Part shown: positions 3,045 to 63,677 of the stretch, one piece after another
Numbering within the stretch: position 1 is the stretch's first letter
Layout of the letters: each line of letters starts with the position of its first letter
DNA from: Octopus sinensis
Taxonomy: Eukaryota
Assembly: GCF_006345805.1 (NCBI RefSeq)
Contig: NC_043019.1
Location: 31,123,360 to 31,187,359 of the forward strand
Length of the DNA stretch: 64,000 nt
Reading direction: 5' to 3'
The notes under the pieces: model-generated
The model's input: only the letters and a program-made list of their open reading frames with translations
Database searches by the model: none
What the model was told of the DNA's origin: nothing
Position numbers and translations under genes: made by a program

Positions 3045-4850
3045 TTTATACTTCACAAACGTGAATTTCCTCATGTGCAAGCATTTCAATGCTTGCTCCT
3101 GTCTAGAATTTATTATATTACCCTTGGATGTGAAAATCCTGTAAAATTCTTCTAAACATAGGTCACATCTATTGATTCCATGTCTGCATGGTTTTGCACT
3201 GCAAATTAATTTCTATTTAATCATATAGTCCTTGTTACTGTCCTTAAAGGACCAGATTAATTTTCTAAAACTCGTTTGGAAACTTTTATTTTTGTCTTTA
3301 AATAACTCAAATGATTTGCCCATCTCCTCTTGAAAATTAATGATGTCCCACCAATGTATAAGAATTTCTTACCCTCAGATATCACTATACATTTACATAT
3401 TACCTTTTCAGTTTTAAACTTATTTCCCACATAACAGGATTACCTATTTCTTTACTACCCCCAAGGGGCTAAACACAGAGAGGACAAACAAGGGCAGACA
3501 AACAGATTAAGTCAATTATATCGACCCCAGTGCATAACTGGTACTTATTTAATCGACCCCGAAAGGATGAAAGGCAAAGTCGACCTTGGCGGAATTTCAA
3601 CTAAGAACGTAACGACAGGCGAAATACATATTTCTTTACTACCCACAAGGGGCTAAATACAGAGAGGATAAACAAGGACAGACAAATGGATGAAGTCGAT
3701 CATATCGACCCCAGTGCATAACTGGTACTTATTTAATCGACCCCAAAAGGATGAAAGGCAAAATCAACCTTGGCGGAATTTGAACTCAGAACGTAGCGAC
3801 AGACCAAATACCTATTTCTTTACTACCCACAAGGGGCTAAACACAGGGAGGACAAACAAGGACAGACAAATGGATGAAGTCGATTATATCGACCCCAGTG
3901 CATAACTGGTTCTTATTTAATCGACCCCGAAAGGATGAAAGGCAAAGTCGACCTTGGCGGAATTTGAACTCAGAACGTAGCGACAGATGAAATACTGCTA
4001 AGCATTTCGCCCAGCGTGCTAACGATTCTGCCAGCTCGCCACCTTATCATAACAGGATTCCCACATAACAGGATTACCATTAAAAACAATTGCAAAGACA
4101 GCCTTTTATATTTCCCTCAGATTTAGTTTCAATTTGATCATTCATTGTAGAATTAAATTCATTCCCACCAAGTTCTTTATTACTATTTGCTCCTTATGAT
4201 ACCATTATTTTTCTTCTTTTCCTAGCTGAATTTTTATTTGATTTTATGTTATTATTAATGTTAAATTGAGTTGTTTCCCTTTCCACGACATTTAATTTCT
4301 TAGCGTTCCCTTCTATTTGGGTTTCTTTATTCCGTTTGATGTCATTATGTTTTGAATTTATTATGCCATTCTGATTGTAATCACATTTTTGAAATTTAGA
4401 TATTATTTTAACATCATGTGCTGCTATAATTTGTGCAATATCATGGCTGAGACATTAACCCGATATAATCTCATGTCAATTAAAAATGTAATATTTGTGG
4501 TTTCTTGGAAAATATTTTTTAAATTACCATATTAAAAACAATTTGGAAAAATTGTAATTGACCTGTAACCACATGGAACGATTAACCATAAAGTATACTT
4601 CGAGTTAAGATCATAATTTTGATGTTTATACCCATTTTTCAAAGGAGTAAGTTTTACTCTGATTTTGATCCATTTTAAAGTTAGCATTTATTTTACTTTT
4701 ATTTTCATCTTTAAATCTTTTAGCTGATTTTATATAAAAAGAATCTGAGATTTTATTAGAGAATACTACATCCTCATTTGCATTAGCAGTAAGACAATTT
4801 TTAACCCTGTTATCAACAATCTCACAATTTTTCCTTTTGTTATAAATATA
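3045..4850 (-). pseudogene. Penelope-like retroelement ORF remnant (post-RT linker and GIY-YIG endonuclease), interrupted by a SINE
   Basis: Manual minus-strand translation across stops and frameshifts gives FKKYFPRNHKYYIFN...HDIAQIIAAHDVKII...CLCNC...SCYVGNKFKTEKVICKCIVISEGKKFLYIGGTSLIFKRRWANHLSY / KDKNKSFQTSFRKLIWSFKD...RCDLCLEE...KCLHMRKFTF. This is the motif order of PLE GIY-YIG domains. Confidence 0.8.
3445..4047 (-). mobile_element. SINE family B (CORE-like), one head plus three tandem bodies, with 21-bp flanking duplication
   Basis: Three units of about 190 bp with GACCCCGAAAGGATGAAAGGCAAAGTCGACC; TTCCCACATAACAGGATTACC occurs at 3424-3444 and 4058-4078. Confidence 0.85.
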
Positions 4851-27329: not shown

Positions 27330-27500
27330 GAAAGTTGGACAAACAGTTTCTTTGAGAGCCAGTGGTCTGAAATATGAACGACGTGACCGGTCAGGCAAAG
27401 CTGTAACTGCATCAGGATGGTGTAGATGCTAGACAGACTAGTACAGGGGAGTATCTCTTTGTCTAGGATTCTATCAAGAAGTTTATAGTAGTAATAAACC
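27330..27500 (-). mobile_element. RTE-clade LINE C-terminal fragment
   Basis: SIYTILMQLQLCLTGHVVHISDHWLSKKLF resembles SI.T.LMQ.QLRWAGHV.RMPD.RLPKKLF. Confidence 0.65.
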
Positions 27501-27504
27501 TAAC

Positions 27505-27925
27505 AGGTGCAGGAGTGGCTGTGTGGTAAGTAGCTTGCTTACCAACCACATGGTTCCGGGTTCAGTCCCACTGCATGGCATCTTGGGCAAGTGTCTTCTG
27601 CTATAGCCTCGGGTCGACCAATGCCTTGTGAGTGGATTTGGTAGACGGAAACTGAAAGAAGCCTGTTGTATATATGTATATATATATATCTATGTGTGTG
27701 TATATGTTTGTGTGTCTGTGTTTGTCCCCCCAACATCGCTTGACAACCGATGCTGGTGTGTTTACGTCCCCGTCACTTAGCGGTTTGGCAAAAGAGACCG
27801 ATAGAATAAGTACTGGGCTTACAAAGAATAAGTCCCGGGGTCGATTTGCTCGACTAAAGGTGGTGCTCCAGCATGGCCGCAGTCAAATGACTGAAACAAG
27901 TAAAAGAGTAAAGAGTAAAGAGTAA
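27505..27925 (+). mobile_element. SINE family A, full length
   Basis: Head-to-tail copy with a triple AGTAAAAG tail. Confidence 0.9.
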
Positions 27926-32915: not shown

Positions 32916-33655
32916 TCTGCAACGACATGATTGAAACAGTGGACCACCTAATCTCTGGATGTAAAGTCTTAGCACCAGTGGAGTATAAATTAAGACATGA
33001 CAGAGTTGGCCAATATCTCCACTGGCTAATAAGTCGGCATTACAATATCAAAACTGCCGACAAGTGGTATAATCACCACCCTGAGGCTGTAACTGAAGGA
33101 GAAAATGTAACCATTCTGTGGGACTTTCCAGTACATACAGACCGAACCATCAAGGCCAATAAACCAGATATTGTAGTGAAAGACCAAAACAATAAAGTTT
33201 GCTTATTGATCGACATGAGCATCCCCTCTGATCATAATATCTCAGCGAAAGAGTTTGACAAGCTCAGAAAATATAAAGACCTACTCATTGAAATTGAGAA
33301 AATGTGGCATCTCAAGGCGGTTACAATACCAGTGATCGTAGGAGCACTAGGAATGATCAAGAAGGGAACCGAAAATTATATGAGAATGATCCCTGGCTTA
33401 CCATCCCTGCAAGAAGTGCAAAAGATTGTCTTAACTGGTACATCACACGTATTGAGAAGAGCATTGTCGATGTGAGAACTGTTGCTGCTCATGTATTTTA
33501 ATTTAACTTTAAAAAAATAAAAAAAAATGTAAAAAATGAACGAACTACTGAGTTTGGTTTAATGGCCTACCAATATACACTATGAGTTTCTTTGCCCTAG
33601 GAGTCGGGAAGACACTCGGCAAGAAATGGAAGAAAATTTGAAAGAAGAAAAAAAA
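32915..33655 (+). mobile_element. 5'-truncated R4/Dong-clade non-LTR retrotransposon inserted in an (AAT)n array
   Basis: An uninterrupted ORF end plus about 180 bp of 3' UTR, flanked on both sides by long (AAT)n. Confidence 0.9.
32927..33475 (+). CDS. C-terminus of R4/Dong ORF: CCHC knuckle remnant and PD-(D/E)xK restriction-like endonuclease
   Basis: FCNDMIETVDHLISGC...YKLRHDRV...ILWDFPVHTD...NKPDIVV...LLIDMSIP...KLRKYKDL...PVIVGALG; no internal stops. Confidence 0.9.
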   Translation: MIETVDHLISGCKVLAPVEYKLRHDRVGQYLHWLISRHYNIKTADKWYNHHPEAVTEGENVTILWDFPVHTDRTIKANKPDIVVKDQNNKVCLLIDMSIPSDHNISAKEFDKLRKYKDLLIEIEKMWHLKAVTIPVIVGALGMIKKGTENYMRMIPGLPSLQEVQKIVLTGTSHVLRRALSM

Positions 33656-36901: not shown

Positions 36902-36946
<45 letters not shown>

Positions 36947-37092
36947 TACGATGGACTTCTTTCAGTTTCTGTATACCAAATCCACTCACAAGGCTTTGGT
37001 CGGCCCCAGGCTATAATAGAAGACACTTGCCCAAGGTGCCACACAGTGGGACTGAACCCAGAACCATGTGGTTCGTAAGCAAGCTACTTACC
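36530..37092 (-). mobile_element. SINE family A split at its internal microsatellite by a roughly 100-bp PLE-terminal-like fragment (36800-36905)
   Basis: The SINE halves lie at 36530-36780 and 36945-37092; the insert matches 19264-19345 and 53044-53119. Confidence 0.75.
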
Positions 37093-37492
37093 ACACAGCC
37101 ACTCCTACACCTATCTATTATTTCAGATAAAATAATATATCGTTTTTCAATCATCATCATCATCGTTATCATCACCATCATGATTGTTGCCATCATTGTT
37201 TTCATCATCATCATCATCATCATTGCTGTCGACGCTTGCATAGGTCAGATGCAGTTTTTAGAGATTGATTTTATATATGACCAAATGCCCTTCTCGTTAT
37301 GGACCCTTACCTGTTTCCAAGTAAGGTAATATTTTCCCATGGCCAGACATAATTTTGCAGGAAATTGGAAATGAATGACACTGCTTCTCATATGATAATG
37401 ATACTCATTTGCAATTATGGTATGGCAAAGCAATGAGAGACACAAACGCATACTTATACACACATTCTCACATATACACACATACATACATA

Positions 37493-41043: not shown

Positions 41044-41116
41044 CGCCCACAGGGGGACTCGAACCCACAACCCTCAGATTAAAAGTCTGATGCTCTACCA
41101 ACTGAGCTATGCGGGC
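41044..41116 (-). tRNA. tRNA-Lys (anticodon TTT)
   Basis: GCCCGCATAGCTCAGTTGGTAGAGCATCAGACTTTTAATCTGAGGGTTGTGGGTTCGAGTCCCCCTGTGGGCG, 73 nt. The cloverleaf folds with one G-U pair in the acceptor stem and one T-stem mismatch; A and B boxes are intact. Confidence 0.9.
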
Positions 41117-44102: not shown

Positions 44103-44915
44103 ATCAGGTCATCCCATAAGTTCTGTCAGAATTTTGAATAAAGAAAACAAGTGATCAAATGTTCTATTTAATTGAAATTTAATCAACAATGTACTTTCCC
44201 TCATTATCTATGACTTTCTTCCATCTATTTACAAGCTTTTTAATCCCATCAATGTAAAACTCTTTTGGTTTCAAAGTGAAGAACTCTGAAATGTCAGTTT
44301 TGACCTCCTCCTGGCTTGCAAAAGTTACGTTCCCCAAATGATTCTGTAAACTATGAAACAAATGGTAGTCTGAAGGAACAAGGTCAGGAGAATAAGGTGG
44401 ATGAGGAATTTTTCCCCAACCAAGCTCTTCGATCTTCTGTGATGTGATCTTTGCATTGTCTTGCATTATGATCTTTGTATTGTCTTGATGAAACATCACT
44501 CCTTTTCGATTAAATAAAGCGGGTCTTTTTTACTTCACAGCTTGGTTCAAACGCTTTAAATGCTGACAGTAGACTTGAACATTGATTGTTGCATTAGATG
44601 GTAACAATTCAAAGTGAATTACTCCTTTGCAATCCCACCAGATAGAGAGAAGAACCTTTTTCCCATGAAGTTCCCTTCTCGGTTGTGGTTGAGCTTTTCC
44701 CCTTTTACCAAGCCACTGTTTACAACGTTTAACATATTGATAGAAGATCCATTTTTTGTCACCAGTCACAAGTCTATCCAAAAAGGGAACTCTAACCCTA
44801 ACCCTCACATTCATCAGGCAATATTTAAAGGAGAGGGATATAATGGCTTGTTGATGTGGCGAATCTCTACTATGTCTTGCAGCCAGGTGTTCATGACTGA
44901 ACATGTGCACAACTA
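44103..44915 (-). pseudogene. Mariner (D,D34D-type) transposase catalytic domain with 3' terminal repeat
   Basis: FLDRLVTGDKKW...LHGKKVLLSIWWD...VK*KRPAL...FHQDN...PHPPYSPDLVPSDYHLF...RWKKVIDNEGKY. The two listed ORFs are in frame across one stop; TATCAGGTCATCCCATAAG at 44103 is TIR-like. Confidence 0.9.
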
Positions 44916-45624
44916 GCCCGCAACTATTAAGTGGGTGTATATCTTTGTCATAAGGGAGAAAGCTACATCTTACTTATTTGGAATTATGTAACTTTTACTG
45001 AAAGAAAGCAATACTTAAAGTACCTATTATCTAGAAAATTCTTAAAAATTCCAATTCAAATTATATATTTTTATCAAAATGTGGTTTTCAAATTTCTTTT
45101 TAACTAAGTGATGAACTGTAATTCACCACAAGCGTTTTTAAAATGTTAAACCATGAGATAACATTTTTTAATATCTTACTATTTCCAATATTTCCATTGC
45201 TAAAACATCCACTTTTCATGTTATCCTATTTTATATGATGAACAGAAATAAAAAAAATATGTCATTTCCTGTCTCCGTACATCTGTTGATATATGTTTAT
45301 ATAAGGTTATTGATATTAAAATATACAAATATATTTTATTCACAGAAGAAAATTAAGTTATGCAAACACATGTTAAAACCAGCTATAAGTTTCTTAACAT
45401 GATTTTTTTCCAATACATCCCCAAACATTTTTATAATGCCTTTGAATAAAAAAAAACAAACTTTGAACATCAGAGATTCTGAGTCTGCAAGTTTTAAATA
45501 AAAACTCTTATTTAAATAACAAATTAACAATTGCAATACATGCCATACAAAACGAAATATATTACTATATGTATGTTTTAAATGTAAACAAAATATATTT
45601 ATTTACAAAACCTATTCATACACA

Positions 45625-46680
45625 ATTCTTTTATCTTTTATCTTTTACTTGTTTCGATCATTTGACTGTGGCCATGCTGTGGCAACACCTTCTAGAATTT
45701 TTAGTCAAATGAGTTGTCTCAGTAACTTTTTTAAAGCCTAGTACTTATTCTATCATCTCCTTTGCTGAACTGAACCGCTAAGTTACAGGAATGTAAACAC
45801 AGACACAAAGACAGACAGACTCACATACACACACACATACATATATATATATATGGTGGGTTTCTTTCAGTTTCCGTCTACCAAACATGCTCACAAGGTT
45901 TTAGTCAGCCCAAGTCTATAGTAGAAGACACATGCCCGAGGTGCCAAACGGTAGGACTGAACCCTGAACCATATGATTGGCAATCAAGCTATTTACCCCA
46001 TGTTGTAGTGGATACCCCCAAGTGAGAAGTGGACTGTTCCACTACTGTTAAACAGTGGACAGACACAACAAGCAGGGTCAGTCAGTGAGGTTCACCATAT
46101 GGGCCAGTCATGCAGACAATGAAGGTACATTGTCATAAGACAGGACATATCAGTGGAGACGAGGAGTCAAGCTACACATAGTGGCAGATAAGACTAACAC
46201 AGAACTGAACCACACACAGGGAAAAATATATAAATTCTATTGAAAAAAGATTCTGAAGAAAAATATGTCTGATAAAACTGGAACTCCAACACAGAACTGA
46301 ACTACACATAGTGAGATATAATATAAATCCATTTGAAAGATTTAAGTCAGGTCACTATGTGTTAGTAAGCGCTTCCAGTAAACAATGTAGACTGGTACTA
46401 CCTGTGGCATTCTGAAAAGAAATTAATTCTGTGTGTGGAAGAATAAGAAATGGAAAAAAAAGTAATAATGCTGTGTGAAAGGAGAAAAAAAATCTCAAAG
46501 GGGGAGGTGTTGTGGTGGACAACCCCAAGTGAGAAGTGGGCTGTTCTACTGTTAGATAACGAGCAAACACAACAAGCAGGGTCAGTTATTGAGGTATGCC
46601 ATATGGACCTGTCAGGCAGACAATGAAGTTACATTGTCATAATGCAGGATGTATCACACCACAGCTGTGCCTTACCTGTA
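45625..46680 (-). mobile_element. SINE family A whose head is interrupted by the miniature LTR element
   Basis: The SINE body runs 45625-46000 and the head remainder CACCACAGCTGTGCCT resumes at 46657. Confidence 0.7.
46001..46656 (+). mobile_element. TRIM-like miniature LTR retrotransposon (5' LTR 46001-46152, PBS 46154-46165, PPT 46497-46507, 3' LTR 46508-46656)
   Basis: Both LTRs start TGTTGT and end TATCA. TGGAGACGAGGA follows LTR1, AAAGGGGGAGG precedes LTR2, and the flanks are CCCCA/CACCA. Confidence 0.8.
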
Positions 46681-46709
46681 TGTATGCATACACACACATA
46701 TATGTGCAC

Positions 46710-46930
46710 ATATGGCAGAAACGTTAGCACGCTGGGTGAAATGCTTAGCAGTATTTCGTCTGCCATTGCGTTTTGAGTTCAAATTCCACAGAGGTCAACT
46801 TTGCCTTTCATCCTTTCGGGGTCAATTAAATAAGTACCAGTTACGTACTGGAGTTAATGTAATCGACTTAATCCTTTTGTCTGTTCCTGTTTGTCCCCTC
46901 TATGTTTAGCCCCCTGTGGGCAATAAAGAA
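46710..46930 (+). mobile_element. SINE family B
   Basis: Head through CCTGTGGGCAATAAAGAAATA tail. Confidence 0.85.
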
Positions 46931-47658
46931 ATATATATACATATATACATATATATACATATATATATATATATTCATTTATATAGAAATACACACATAC
47001 GTATATGGTGGGTTTCTTTCACTTTTTGTTTACTCAAATCACTCACAAGGCTTTGGCTGGCCTATGGTTATAGTAGAAGACACTTGCCCAAGCCGCTGCA
47101 CAATGGGATAGAACCTGAGACCACATGATTGTAATGGAAACTTCTCAACCTCATACCCACACCTAAGCCTATCTACTCTTCACACCCTGTTCAGAATGGC
47201 ACTGTCCAAAGTGTCTTTTTTTCTCTTTTTGGTAAGAGATTAAGATATAATGTATGATATGAAGGACACACAGTCAATATTTCTAGCACAGCCAGCTACT
47301 CCATATTATTTTCTCTCATTGTCTGACCATTACAACTGTCGAGACAAATGTCAATCAACCAAGTCAAGTGGACATTTATGTATGCGGTTCTCTGATACAC
47401 AGTATTATAAAATAAAAATTTCATGTATTTCAGACTCTAGTGCAGTTTTCTAGCTTGTTACTATTTTTGGCTTATACAAGAATTATTTTTAGATTATGCA
47501 CAGCATAGCTGTTTGGTAAGAAGTTTGCTTCCAAAACAGATGGTTTCTGGTTCAGTCCCCCTGTGTGGTCCCTTGGGCAAATGTTTTCTATTTCAACTCA
47601 GGTTGACCAAAGCCTTGCAAGAGGATTTGGTGCATGGAAACAGAAAGAAACCCAAGTG

Positions 47659-47730
47659 GCTGGGATTGTCTAGTGGTTAGAACTCCACGTTGTGGCCGTG
47701 GTAACCCAGGTTCGAATCTTGGTCATGGCA
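47659..47730 (+). pseudogene. tRNA-His (GTG), probably a pseudogene
   Basis: GCTGGGATTGTCTAGTGGTTAGAACTCCACGTTGTGGCCGTGGTAACCCAGGTTCGAATCTTGGTCATGGCA, 72 nt. The anticodon arm is perfect, but the acceptor stem has two G-U pairs and one G-A mismatch, and there is no T4+ run immediately downstream. Confidence 0.75.
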
Positions 47731-48060: not shown

Positions 48061-48293
48061 TATTCTGTTGTGTCTGGGGAGAGTCATTTTCTTTTTGTGC
48101 CTTATTATGTAACACACTCACCGGTAAAATTTCCACTTTTTTCTTATTTTTGCAAAACTATTGAAAAGGTTGCAAGATGCAGCAAAAATTTTAGGATAAT
48201 AAAAATAAGGTGAAAAAGAGGAAATTTTACCGGTGAGTGTGTTACATTATAAGGCACAAAAAGAAAATGACTCTCCCCAGACATAACAGAATA
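48061..48293. repeat. 74-bp inverted repeat (2 mismatches) with 85-bp spacer, between (TA)n arrays
   Basis: 48061-48134 versus the reverse complement of 48220-48293. Confidence 0.9.
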
Positions 48294-48356
48294 TGCTTCA
48301 ACACACGAACTCATATAAAGGATCTTGCAAACCAAATCCAAAAACGAAATATGTAC

Positions 48357-48389
<33 letters not shown>

Positions 48390-53160: not shown

Positions 53161-53515
53161 GTTATATTTCAGAATGGCTATTTTGCCAGTTTAGCCAATA
53201 AAAACACACACACTATATTTTTGGTGTTACTTTGCTTCAGTGTTATTCATTTTTTACATTAATCTTAATCTTATTTCAGCCAGAGTTCTTTCGTCACACT
53301 CCTGTGACTGCTTCAGTGGTCCTTTGTTTTCTTCTTTCTTATTTGTGTCTCTCCTTACTAACTGTCAGCCATTTTGTATTTGTATTGTATGTCTTCATTT
53401 GCGCATGCTTATATCTCTATGTGCGTCTATGTTTATTTAGTGTGTGTGTGTGTGGGGGGGGATGCCTGTAACATTTATTGGCTAAACTGGCAAAATGACC
53501 ATTCCGAAATATAAC
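53161..53515. repeat. 42-bp inverted repeat enclosing a hammerhead motif
   Basis: 53161-53202 versus 53474-53515, with about three mismatches. Confidence 0.85.
53280..53319 (-). ncRNA. Minimal type I hammerhead ribozyme, one core substitution
   Basis: Minus strand: CCA CTGAAGCA GTCAC AGGAGT GTGAC GAAAG AA CTC TGG. It has a 3-bp stem I, 5-bp stem II, 2-bp stem III and a CUC triplet. Confidence 0.6.
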
Positions 53516-53711
53516 AATATCTGTTTCAACACACGACTTCACATAAAAAATCTTGCACAACAAATATATAAACGTATATATATATATCTCCATATATACA
53601 GAGAGATGGAAAGAAAGAAGAAAAAAGAAGCATAAAAGTTCATAGTTCAACTTACCAACATTATAGAAACAAGAACATAAGTCCTTAGGTGCAATACGGT
53701 GTAGATATATA

Positions 53712-61258: not shown

Positions 61259-63293
61259 TCATCACATCATCATCATTTAGCGTCCGTTTTCCATGCTAGC
61301 ATGGGTTGGACGGTTCTACTGGGGTCTGTGAAGCCAGAAGGCTTCATCAGGCCCAGTCAAATCTGGCAGTGTTTCTACGGCTGGATGCCCTTCCTAACGC
61401 CAACCACTCCGTGAGTGTAGTGGGTGCTTTTTAATTATACGCCCCCCGCACTGGTGCCAGACAGAGCTGGCAAACAGCCACGAACGGATGGTGCTTTTAT
61501 GTGCCACCGGCACGAGGGCCAGGCGAGGCTGGCAACGGACACGAAACGGGGCGGTGCTGGCAACGGTCGCGAAACGGAAAGTTCTCTTACATGCCACCGG
61601 CACTGGTAACACATCTGCAATTTCCATTGATCGATTTCCATTGATCGATTTCGATTCTGATCCTCACTTGCCTCAATGGGTCTTCACAAGCAGAGTTTCG
61701 ACATGCCACCGGCACTGGTAGCACATCCGCAATTTCCATTGATCGATTTCGATTCTGATCCTCACTTGCCTCAACACGTCTTCACAAGTAGAGTTTTGTG
61801 TCCCAAGAAGGGAAGGTATGCATACGTAGGCTGGCTCCATCCCATGTAGAAGGCCACGGGTTGTGGACTCACTTGTCCTGCCGGGTCTTCTCGCGCACAG
61901 CACACTTCCAGAGGTCTCGGTCTCTAGTCATTTCCTCAGTGAGACCTAAAGTTCGAAGGTCGTGCTTCACCACCTCGTCCCAGGTTTTCCTGGGTCTGCC
62001 TCTTCCACAGGTTCCCTCAACCGCTAGGGTGTGGCACTTTTTCACACAACTATCTTCATCCATTCTCGCCACATGACCATACCAGCGCAAACGTCTCTCT
62101 TGCACACCACAACTGATGCTTCTTAGGTCCAGCTTTTCTCTCAAGGTACTTACACTCTGCCGAGTGTGAGTACTGGCATTACACATCCATCGGAGCATAC
62201 TGGCTTCATTTCTAGCGAGCTTATGCATATCCTCAGCAGTCACGGCCCATGTTTCACTGCCATGTAGCATGGCTGTTCATACACACGCATCATACAGTCT
62301 GCCTTTCACTCTGTGCAAGAGGCCTTTTGTCACCAGCAGAGGTAAGAGCTCTCTCTCTGAACTTTGCCCAAGCTATTCTTACTCTAGCAGTTACACTTTC
62401 AGCACACCCACCCCCGCGCTGCTGACTTGGTCACCTAGGTAACGGAAACTATCACTATTTCTAGTTTTTCTCCCTGGAAAGTGACGGAAGTTGGTCTCAG
62501 AGCATTTCAGTGTTTATTGTTCCTGAGCATCTGCCACATACAAAAACCATCTTCCTAGTTAGCCTTCCTTTGACATTGCTGCATCTCTTATGTGTCCATA
62601 GCTTACACTTGGTGCATCTTATAGAGTTTCTACCTACACCTTTTCTACAGATCGAGCAGGGCCATCTACCTGAAGGTGTTTGTGATTTGTCTACCTTCCT
62701 ACTGATTACGACTTTGGTTTTAGCTAGATTGACTCTGAGGCCCTTCGATTCTAATCCTTGTTTCCACACCTGAAACTTCTCCTCCAGTTCTGATAGCGAC
62801 TCAGCAATTAGAGCAAGGTCATCAGCATAGAGGAGCTCCCAAGGGCATCCTGTCTTGAATCCTCCGTTATGCCTGGAGGACTATGATAAATAGGAGGGGC
62901 TGAGTACTGAGCCTTGGTGGACCCCTACCTCTACCCGGAATTCTTCACTGTACTCATTTCCAACCCTCACCCTACTAGCGGCGTCCCTATACATGGCCCG
63001 CACAGCTCTCACTAACCATTCATCTATCCCTAGTTTTCTCATTGCCCACCAGATAAGGGATCGGGGGACCCTGTGAAGGCTTTCTCCATGTCAACAAAAG
63101 CCAGGTACAGGGGCTATCTTGGCTAGGTATTTCTCCTGCAGCTGCCTTACCAGGAATATAGCATCAGTAGTACTTTTCCCTGGCACAAACCCAAACTGCA
63201 TCTCATCTAAACTAACTTTCTCTCTAATTAGTTGGGCTATGACCCTCTCCGTAACCTTCATCACCTGGTCCAACAGCTTGATACCTCTGTAAT
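61259..63293 (-). mobile_element. RTE-X clade LINE, 5'-truncated (RT, Cys-rich insert, C-terminus, 3' UTR, (GAT)n tail), with several frameshifts
   Basis: YRGIKLL...QFGFVPGKSTTDAIF...FVDMEKAFDRV...GVHQGSVLSPLLF...LLYADD...CSICRKGVGRNSIRCTKCKLWTHKRC...LHGSETW...RRLRWYGHV...GRGRPRKTW. Confidence 0.95.
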
Positions 63294-63460
63294 ACATACA
63301 CACATACACAGTAACATATATACATATACATACACACACATACATATACACACACACACACACACTTATATATATATATACATACACACATACACATACA
63401 TATACATACATATATACATATACATATACACATACACATACATACACAAACATACACAGT

Positions 63461-63496
<36 letters not shown>

Positions 63497-63677
63497 ATAT
63501 ATACATATACATACACACATACACAGTAACATATATACATATACATACACACACATACCTATACACACACACACACACACTTATATATATATATATACAT
63601 ACACACATACACATACATATACATACATATATACATATACATATACACATACACATACATACACAAACATACACAGT

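What the first reader, a model, noticed from the sequence alone, without database searches (positions are those of the whole stretch)
46001..46656. TRIM-like miniature LTR retrotransposon with complete cis signals
Seen: 152-bp and 149-bp direct repeats, both TG...CA and roughly 80-85% identical by eye. TGGAGACGAGGA starts one base after LTR1, the purine tract AAAGGGGGAGG abuts LTR2, and the interior of about 350 bp has no recognisable coding and a short internal duplication (AACACAGAACTGAACYACACA). A 5-bp flank duplication has one mismatch, and the element splits a SINE head. Known: TGGCGACGAGG is complementary to the 3' end of tRNA-Ser(GCU), and TRIMs are well known in plants but reported in few animals. 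Inference: an old non-autonomous element mobilised by a Gypsy-like partner. I know of no cephalopod TRIM description but cannot search.
Basis: partly seen in the sequence, partly recalled or inferred. Interest (0 to 1): 0.7.

Follow-up and report, generated by a model that had tools for sequence, protein, structure and literature searches.

The report
Old miniature LTR retrotransposon in octopus
A 656-base gene-less retrotransposon relic with two terminal repeats sits inside a SINE in an octopus-type genome; its structure is real and textbook, but it is an ordinary dead mobile element, and whether it belongs to a multi-copy "TRIM" family could not be tested here.

Summary
Two direct repeats (46001-46152 and 46508-46656) are 83.9% identical and both run TG...CA. 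They flank 355 non-coding bases. A tRNA-Ser(GCU)-type primer-binding site starts one base after the first repeat. An 11-base purine tract abuts the second repeat. The flanks carry a 5-bp duplication matching at 4 of 5 bases.

Eleven other copies of the interrupted SINE in the window run straight across the junction once the element and one duplicate are removed. This shows a single integrase-type insertion.

No frame encodes anything recognisable. The repeats carry no tRNA, 5S or hammerhead motif.

By structure this is a TRIM-type non-autonomous LTR retrotransposon. It is old (repeat divergence K2P 0.19) and inert.

What defines a TRIM family is multiple ~650-bp copies, solo repeats and an autonomous partner. 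None of this could be tested, because no tool searches cephalopod genome DNA. Only 41 kb of Octopus vulgaris DNA could be fetched, and it holds no copy.

The "Gypsy partner" inference is unsupported. The 5-bp duplication, the TGTTG...TATCA ends and the short repeats fit GalEa-like Copia elements at least as well.

TRIMs are already described in bivalves, insects, cestodes, fish and nemerteans. I found no cephalopod report. Interest is low to moderate.

The parts
45996..46000 (+). Left copy of the 5-bp target-site duplication (CCCCA)
   Evidence: It matches the right copy at 4 of 5 bases.
46001..46152 (+). 5' LTR, 152 nt, TGTTG...TATCA
   Evidence: 83.9% identical to the 3' LTR, E = 1.5e-38. 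No Rfam tRNA, 5S or hammerhead match.
46115..46134 (+). Hairpin GACAATG-AAGGTA-CATTGTC inside the 5' LTR. The stem is identical in the 3' LTR (46619-46638).
   Evidence: Sequence. It is predicted in the MFE folds of both LTRs. Its function is unknown.
46154..46165 (+). Primer-binding site TGGAGACGAGGA, 1 nt after the 5' LTR. It is tRNA-Ser(GCU)-type with 10 of 12 bases matching.
   Evidence: it is the only site in the window (both strands) within 2 mismatches of TGGCGACGAGGG. The tRNA sequence comes from PMC10359600.
46153..46507 (+). Internal domain, 355 nt, A-rich (42.5% A), non-coding
   Evidence: Longest ORFs are 58 and 71 aa. No Pfam domain in six frames. No related protein among 5.8 billion. 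No other copy in the window.
46196..46246 (+). Internal duplication, copy 1
   Evidence: (family D4).
46288..46338 (+). Internal duplication, copy 2 (75-82% identical to copy 1)
   Evidence: (family D4).
46497..46507 (+). Polypurine tract AAAGGGGGAGG, abutting the 3' LTR
   Evidence: There are 59 purine runs of at least 11 nt in the 64-kb plus strand, so an exact abutment is about a 1e-3 event.
46508..46656 (+). 3' LTR, 149 nt, TGTTG...TATCA
46657..46661 (+). Right copy of the target-site duplication (CACCA)
45855..46000 (-). Body and most of the tRNA-like head of the interrupted SINE copy (approximate left limit)
   Evidence: 75-83% identical to more than 15 copies in the window.
46662..46680 (-). 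Remaining ~20 nt of the 5' end of the interrupted SINE (approximate right limit)
   Evidence: the copies stay alignable for about 15-20 nt past the junction and then diverge. Intact heads are called tRNA-like by relaxed ARAGORN.

Best explanation
This is one decayed copy of a non-autonomous LTR retrotransposon of miniature (TRIM-type) architecture: 5' LTR, PBS, 355-nt non-coding interior, PPT, 3' LTR.

Inferred life cycle (standard LTR-retroelement mechanism):
1. An RNA running from the 5' LTR to the 3' LTR was packaged by Gag/Pol supplied in trans by an autonomous element.
2. Minus-strand cDNA was primed by the 3' end of tRNA-Ser(GCU) annealed to the PBS.
3. Plus-strand synthesis was primed from the polypurine tract.
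4. The partner's integrase joined the TG...CA ends into the tRNA-like head of a SINE and made a 5-bp target duplication.

Since then the two LTRs have diverged by 16% (K2P 0.186). At neutral rates of 1-5e-9 per site per year this means tens of millions of years. The PBS has picked up about 2 changes, and the copy is inert.

Shown: the anatomy, the single-event insertion and the lack of coding capacity.
Inferred: trans-mobilisation, the identity of the primer tRNA in the host, the age in years, and membership of a multi-copy family (my estimate about 0.55-0.6). The partner's superfamily is open, Copia-like or Gypsy-like.
For: - LTR pair: 152/149 nt, 83.9% identical, E = 1.5e-38, TG...CA ends.
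- It is the only low-copy direct-repeat pair with TG...CA ends in the 64-kb window.
- PBS-like 12-mer one base after LTR1, 10 of 12 matching the reverse complement of tRNA-Ser-GCT. The other eight tRNA 3' ends tested match at 5-7 of 12. It is the only such site in 128 kb.
- An 11-nt purine tract abuts LTR2.
- 5-bp TSD matching at 4 of 5, and a gapless SINE alignment across the reconstructed empty site in 11 copies.
- No ORF above 71 aa, no Pfam domain in six frames, and no related protein in 5.8 billion sequences.
- The interior is 42.5% A on the sense strand.
- Length and layout meet the published TRIM definition (PMC6934838; PMC10886601).
Against: - Only one copy is seen. There is no second LTR or interior in the 64-kb window or in 41 kb of O. 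vulgaris DNA. That sampling only bounds the family below roughly 1e5 copies, so it says little either way.
- The PBS has two mismatches and was compared with a human tRNA, not an octopus one.
- The TSD is imperfect.
- The LTRs have no recognisable TATA box or AATAAA.
- No autonomous partner was identified.
Confidence: 0.85

Rival explanations
1. It is a one-off internal-deletion derivative of an autonomous LTR retrotransposon with ~150-bp LTRs. Either a full element was deleted after insertion, or a defective cDNA inserted once. There would be no family of ~650-bp copies, so it would not be a TRIM in the family sense.
For: - Only a single copy is seen in about 105 kb of octopus DNA.
- Autonomous Copia (GalEa-like) elements with 133-217-bp LTRs and near-identical termini exist in aquatic invertebrates (PMC3587641). 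GalEa and Hydra Copia occur in most cephalopods studied (PMC6238403).
- A 355-nt interior could simply be a leader joined to a 3' untranslated end.
Against: - No trace of gag, pol or integrase coding in any frame.
- A deletion would have to remove roughly 4-5 kb while sparing both the PBS and the PPT.
- The interior carries its own ancient 51-nt duplication, which is typical of non-autonomous interiors but not diagnostic.
- The sampling has no power against families of up to tens of thousands of copies.
Confidence: 0.3
2. It is not a retroelement. Either a ~507-bp inserted sequence underwent a partial tandem duplication (A-B-A), or two copies of a 150-bp repeat landed close together by chance.
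For: An A-B-A layout can arise from 1.3 copies of a tandem unit. Start-to-start spacing is 504-507 nt.
Against: - The whole A-B-A unit, not A-B, is bracketed by the 5-bp duplication, and the SINE is restored exactly when it is removed.
- TG...CA ends sit exactly at both repeat boundaries.
- A tRNA-complementary TGG motif lies 1 nt after the first repeat, and a purine tract touches the second.
- The repeat occurs nowhere else in the window.
Confidence: 0.03
3. It is a small-RNA-promoter or ribozyme-bearing miniature LTR element: a TRIMp3 type (Helenus, Ajax or Cassandra, with tRNA- or 5S-derived LTR sequence), or a retrozyme with hammerhead ribozymes in the LTRs.
For: - The first 11 nt of LTR1 (TGTTGTAGTGG) resemble a pol III A box at 10 of 11 positions. 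This is my own reading of the sequence.
- Such elements occur in molluscs (Helenus in oyster, PMC10886601).
Against: - Rfam scan of 45600-47200 at E up to 10 gives no tRNA, 5S or hammerhead match in either LTR.
- ARAGORN finds nothing there.
- The A-box-like string is degraded in LTR2, and no B box lies at a proper distance.
- Animal Helenus make 4-bp TSDs (PMC10886601), not 5-bp ones.
Confidence: 0.02

Closest known systems
TRIMs (terminal-repeat retrotransposons in miniature; Witte et al. 2001 definition as restated in PMC6934838 and PMC10886601)
   Same: Under 1000 bp; terminal direct repeats of 100-250 bp; interior starts with a tRNA-complementary PBS and ends with a PPT; no coding capacity; 5-bp TSD; TG...CA ends.
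   Different: The interior (355 nt) is at the long end of the range. Only one old copy is documented. Copy number, solo LTRs, tandem arrays and the partner are unknown. The host is a cephalopod, for which I found no TRIM report.
biv-TRIM of bivalve molluscs (PMC6934838)
   Same: Molluscan host; miniature LTR-like architecture; G-rich PPT (GGGGAGA there, AAAGGGGGAGG here).
   Different: biv-TRIM has 202-218-bp repeats, a 77-80-bp interior, no identifiable canonical PBS, and a conserved inner motif TGATCCCAAAGGAC. The best match to that motif here has 5 mismatches out of 14. There is no sign of sequence relatedness.
Helenus / Ajax / Cassandra (TRIMp3; PMC10886601)
   Same: Short non-autonomous LTR elements with a PBS and PPT; Helenus occurs in oyster.
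   Different: Those carry tRNA- or 5S-derived pol III promoter sequence in the LTRs, and animal Helenus make 4-bp TSDs. This element has no such match and a 5-bp TSD.
GalEa-like Copia retrotransposons (CoRex1/CoRex2, GalEa1; PMC3587641), a candidate partner type
   Same: LTR termini TGTTA...TATCA versus TGTTG...TATCA here; short LTRs (133-217 bp); a purine-rich PPT next to the 3' LTR. The 5-bp TSD usual for Copia is general knowledge. GalEa and Hydra Copia are present in most cephalopods studied (PMC6238403).
   Different: They are autonomous, 4.9-kb coding elements. Their PBS is TGGTAGCAGAGC (tRNA-Met), not tRNA-Ser-like. The resemblance rests on about 10 terminal bases only.
   Same: Use of a tRNA-Ser PBS; TG...CA LTR ends.
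   Different: The isoacceptor and sequence were not compared. No Gypsy sequence is in the window. Steamer-like mollusc Gypsy elements use other tRNAs (Asn in MchSLE1; PMC11046912).

Membership tests
TRIM (structural definition) | Two terminal direct repeats of about 100-250 bp, with TG...CA ends | tested here: met
   152 and 149 nt, 83.9% identical, TGTTG...TATCA.
TRIM (structural definition) | Total length below 1000 bp with a short interior | tested here: met
   656 bp in total; interior 355 nt.
TRIM (structural definition) | PBS complementary to a tRNA 3' end just downstream of the 5' repeat | tested here: met
   TGGAGACGAGGA at +1, 10 of 12 matching the complement of the human tRNA-Ser-GCT 3' end. 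It is unique in 128 kb. Caveat: the octopus tRNA was not available.
TRIM (structural definition) | Polypurine tract immediately upstream of the 3' repeat | tested here: met
   AAAGGGGGAGG at 46497-46507 abuts LTR2.
TRIM (structural definition) | No coding capacity for Gag/Pol | tested here: met
   ORFs of 71 aa or less; no Pfam hit in six frames; no homologue in 5.8 billion proteins.
TRIM (structural definition) | Target-site duplication (usually 5 bp) and a clean insertion | tested here: met
   CCCCA/CACCA. The SINE is restored in alignment with 11 copies.
TRIM (as a mobile family) | Multiple dispersed copies of the same miniature element, with solo repeats or tandem arrays | not testable with these tools
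   No DNA search over cephalopod genomes is available. There is no copy in the window or in 41 kb of O. vulgaris DNA. Metagenome and prokaryote-genome scans gave only chance hits.
TRIM (as a mobile family) | An autonomous partner sharing LTR termini, PBS or PPT | not testable with these tools
   No LTR-retrotransposon coding sequence was found among the window ORFs examined. There are only literature leads.
TRIMp3 (Helenus / Ajax / Cassandra) | tRNA- or 5S rRNA-derived sequence inside the LTRs | tested here: not met
   Rfam at E up to 10 and ARAGORN find none in 46001-46656.
Retrozyme | Hammerhead ribozyme motif in each terminal repeat | tested here: not met
   No hammerhead family match at E up to 10.
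biv-TRIM | Repeats of 202-218 bp, interior of 77-80 bp, conserved inner motif TGATCCCAAAGGAC | tested here: not met
   The dimensions differ. The best motif match has 5 mismatches out of 14.
Non-autonomous derivative of GalEa-like Copia | LTR termini TGTTA...TATCA and PBS TGGTAGCAGAGC (tRNA-Met) | tested here: inconclusive
   The termini nearly match (TGTTG...TATCA) but the PBS does not.

The most novel reading that the evidence does not exclude
This copy represents the first described TRIM family of cephalopods. It would be a tRNA-Ser(GCU)-primed miniature LTR element that spread in octopus genomes tens of millions of years ago. It would have used the enzymes of a Copia-type (GalEa/Hydra-like) partner rather than a Gypsy partner, and it would be present as many full copies and solo LTRs.
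Probability: 0.4. Interest if true: 0.4.

Novelty: new member of a known kind. Interest (0 to 1): 0.25.

Why it matters
If a family exists, TRIMs would extend to a third molluscan context, after biv-TRIM of bivalves and Helenus of oyster. Octopus repeat annotation would gain a curated non-autonomous LTR family with a defined PBS, PPT and termini. Those features also give a handle for finding its autonomous partner.

It would not change any concept. TRIMs are already known from plants, fungi, insects, cestodes, bivalves, fish and nemerteans. As it stands, the locus is a well-preserved example of an ordinary dead insertion. Its practical value is for repeat masking and for dating: the nested order is SINE first, then the LTR element.

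Tried and rejected
1. Six-frame translation of the element searched against 5.8 billion proteins, hoping to catch spurious ORFs called on other copies. No hits, and even the window's own ORFs are not in that collection.
2. Exact 20- to 23-mers from the conserved LTR blocks scanned against JGI metagenome contigs and prokaryote genomes. The only results were a 25-nt chance match in a 56% GC bacterial-type contig and a chance match of the palindromic hairpin in Pedobacter.
3. Sampling octopus DNA through proteins related to the window's RTE-type LINE. Only two O. vulgaris proteins were usable, giving 41 kb with no copy.
4. Looking up a window ORF in the gene-position index to identify the source record. 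It is not on record.
5. Supplementary PBS table of PMC13524379. It is not held as text.
6. Rejected readings: tRNA/5S-bearing TRIMp3 and retrozyme, relatedness to biv-TRIM, and tandem duplication or two independent insertions.

Full report
**What is there**

Reading 45601-47100 and running the repeat finder confirm two direct repeats, 46001-46152 and 46508-46656. A gapped alignment gives 125 identities in 149 aligned positions (83.9%). There is one 3-nt gap, with 17 transitions and 7 transversions. BLAST E is 1.5e-38. Both repeats begin TGTTG and end TATCA.

One base after the first repeat comes TGGAGACGAGGA (46154-46165). The purine run AAAGGGGGAGG (46497-46507) touches the second repeat. The 355-nt interior is A-rich (42.5% A). 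It contains an old 51-nt duplication, 46196-46246 versus 46288-46338. The five bases on either side are CCCCA and CACCA.

**Is it a single insertion?**

The flanks belong to an abundant SINE family. One third of the window is repeated within the window. I joined the flanks and aligned them with 11 other copies from the window. The copies run through the junction without a gap once the element and one 5-bp copy are removed. They stay alignable for a further 15-20 nt, to the 5' end of the SINE, which lies on the minus strand.

Relaxed ARAGORN calls intact heads of this SINE family tRNA-like. This empty-site test rules out two independent insertions and a simple tandem duplication. The whole repeat-interior-repeat unit entered at one point and made a 5-bp duplication, which has since picked up one difference.

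**Are the cis signals more than chance?**

The 3' end of human tRNA-Ser-GCT-1-1 is ...CCCTCGTCGCCA (PMC10359600). Its complement is TGGCGACGAGGG. The element matches 10 of 12 positions. The mismatches are the base opposite the discriminator and position 12.

The eight other tRNA 3' ends printed in that paper and tested here match at only 5-7 of 12. In the whole window, both strands, this is the only site within two mismatches of that 12-mer, and it lies exactly one base after the 5' repeat.

The plus strand has 59 purine runs of at least 11 nt in 64 kb. One ending exactly at the repeat boundary is therefore roughly a 1-in-1000 event. A self-comparison of the window finds only two low-copy direct-repeat pairs of LTR-like spacing, and only this one has TG...CA ends.

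**Coding capacity**

The longest ORFs overlapping the element are 58 and 71 aa. Six-frame translations give no Pfam domain even at E = 10, apart from one meaningless 9-bit hit. A combined six-frame query finds nothing among 5.8 billion proteins.

The element is therefore non-autonomous as it stands. Short, degenerate remnants of poorly conserved coding ends cannot be strictly excluded.

**Special TRIM types**

An Rfam scan of 45600-47200 at E up to 10 shows no tRNA, 5S rRNA or hammerhead match in the repeats. ARAGORN finds nothing there either. So this is not a Helenus-, Ajax- or Cassandra-type element and not a retrozyme.

The conserved inner motif of bivalve biv-TRIM is absent; the best match has 5 mismatches out of 14. 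The dimensions also differ (PMC6934838).

One 7-bp-stem hairpin (GACAATG...CATTGTC) is kept in both repeats. Its role is unknown.

**Mechanism**

The anatomy is that of an LTR retroelement that depends on enzymes supplied in trans:
- tRNA-Ser-primed minus-strand synthesis from the PBS;
- PPT-primed plus-strand synthesis;
- integrase joining of the TG...CA ends, with a 5-bp staggered cut.

These steps are inferred from the established LTR-retroelement cycle, not shown here.

The divergence between the repeats (K2P 0.186) makes the copy old. At 1-5e-9 substitutions per site per year it would be about 19-93 million years old, but the rate for octopus is my assumption. The element is younger than the SINE copy it interrupts.

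**Host**

An RTE-type LINE remnant in the window is 75-85% identical to 'hypothetical predicted proteins' of Octopus vulgaris. The window's SINEs recur in two O. vulgaris chromosome loci. The window therefore comes from an Octopus or a close relative.

This could not be answered. No tool searches cephalopod genome DNA.
- The element has no second copy in the 64-kb window.
- Only two O. vulgaris loci (41 kb) could be fetched through related proteins, and they hold no copy.
- Exact-word scans of JGI metagenomes and prokaryote genomes gave only chance hits.

Zero extra copies in about 105 kb bounds the family only below roughly 1e5 copies, so it carries no weight. I estimate a multi-copy non-autonomous family at about 0.55-0.6 and a one-off deletion derivative at about 0.3. 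The main reason is that a clean PBS-to-PPT miniature with no coding trace is what replicating TRIM families look like. A post-insertion deletion would have to spare both priming sites.

**Partner**

- tRNA-Ser PBSs occur in insect Ty3/Gypsy errantiviruses (PMC13524379).
- Against that, the 5-bp duplication, the ~150-bp repeats and the termini TGTTG...TATCA are strikingly close to GalEa-like Copia elements. Those have termini TGTTA...TATCA and LTRs of 133-217 bp (PMC3587641).
- GalEa and Hydra Copia clades are found in about two thirds of the cephalopods studied (PMC6238403).
- However, GalEa uses a tRNA-Met PBS.

The superfamily of the partner stays open.

**Comparison with what is known, and novelty**

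TRIMs are defined structurally: under 1000 bp, terminal repeats of 100-250 bp, PBS, PPT, no genes. They are reported from plants, fungi, hymenopteran insects, taeniid cestodes, bivalves, fish, coelacanth and nemerteans (PMC10886601; PMC6934838).

My searches of the held literature found no cephalopod TRIM. That does not cover Repbase or Dfam.

The element meets every structural criterion. The family-level criteria are untested. At best it is a new member of a known kind in a new host class.

**Verdict**

This is an ordinary, well-preserved relic of a miniature LTR retrotransposon, of low to moderate interest.

Noticed in passing
window 41044-41116 (-): tRNA-Lys(UUU)-like gene scoring 70.5 bits with the Rfam tRNA model, followed by a run of nine T. 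It looks like a genuine or very young tRNA gene, although the T stem has one mismatch.
   Followed up: partly
window 47659-47730 (+): Diverged tRNA-His(GUG)-like sequence (42.5 bits), 1 kb downstream of the element. It is probably a pseudogene or a SINE head.
   Followed up: partly
window ~61800-63500 (-): Frameshifted RTE-type LINE remnant with reverse transcriptase (RVT_1) and a PHD finger. It is 75% identical to an O. vulgaris RT-domain protein (P0052).
   Followed up: partly
window 44530-44910 (-) and adjacent ORF: Mariner-type transposase remnant (Pfam Transposase_1, E = 3e-23).
   Followed up: partly
window 3445-4033; L002 16597-17921: The ~183-bp unit of the second SINE family (the one right of the element, 46713-46933) occurs as head-to-tail arrays. 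There are three units in the window and about seven in an O. vulgaris chromosome locus. This suggests a SINE-derived satellite.
   Followed up: no
window 36930-37125 and 27495-27690 (intact copies of the target SINE): With a relaxed threshold ARAGORN labels the SINE heads tRNA-Ser(gct)-like. That is the same isoacceptor the element's PBS points to. It is probably coincidence.
   Followed up: no
protein P0051: A protein labelled 'MAG: Herbaspirillum sp.' is 68% identical to this octopus-type LINE reverse transcriptase. This is likely animal DNA binned into a bacterial metagenome-assembled genome.
   Followed up: no
window 48264-48373 and 53492-53598: The only other low-copy direct-repeat pair in the window: 110 nt, 74.5% identical, 5.1 kb apart. 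It has no TG...CA ends and is unexplained.
   Followed up: no
window 32927-33475 (+): A 182-aa ORF with no Pfam match and no exact record in the gene index. By eye it resembles the C-terminal region of a LINE ORF2.
   Followed up: partly
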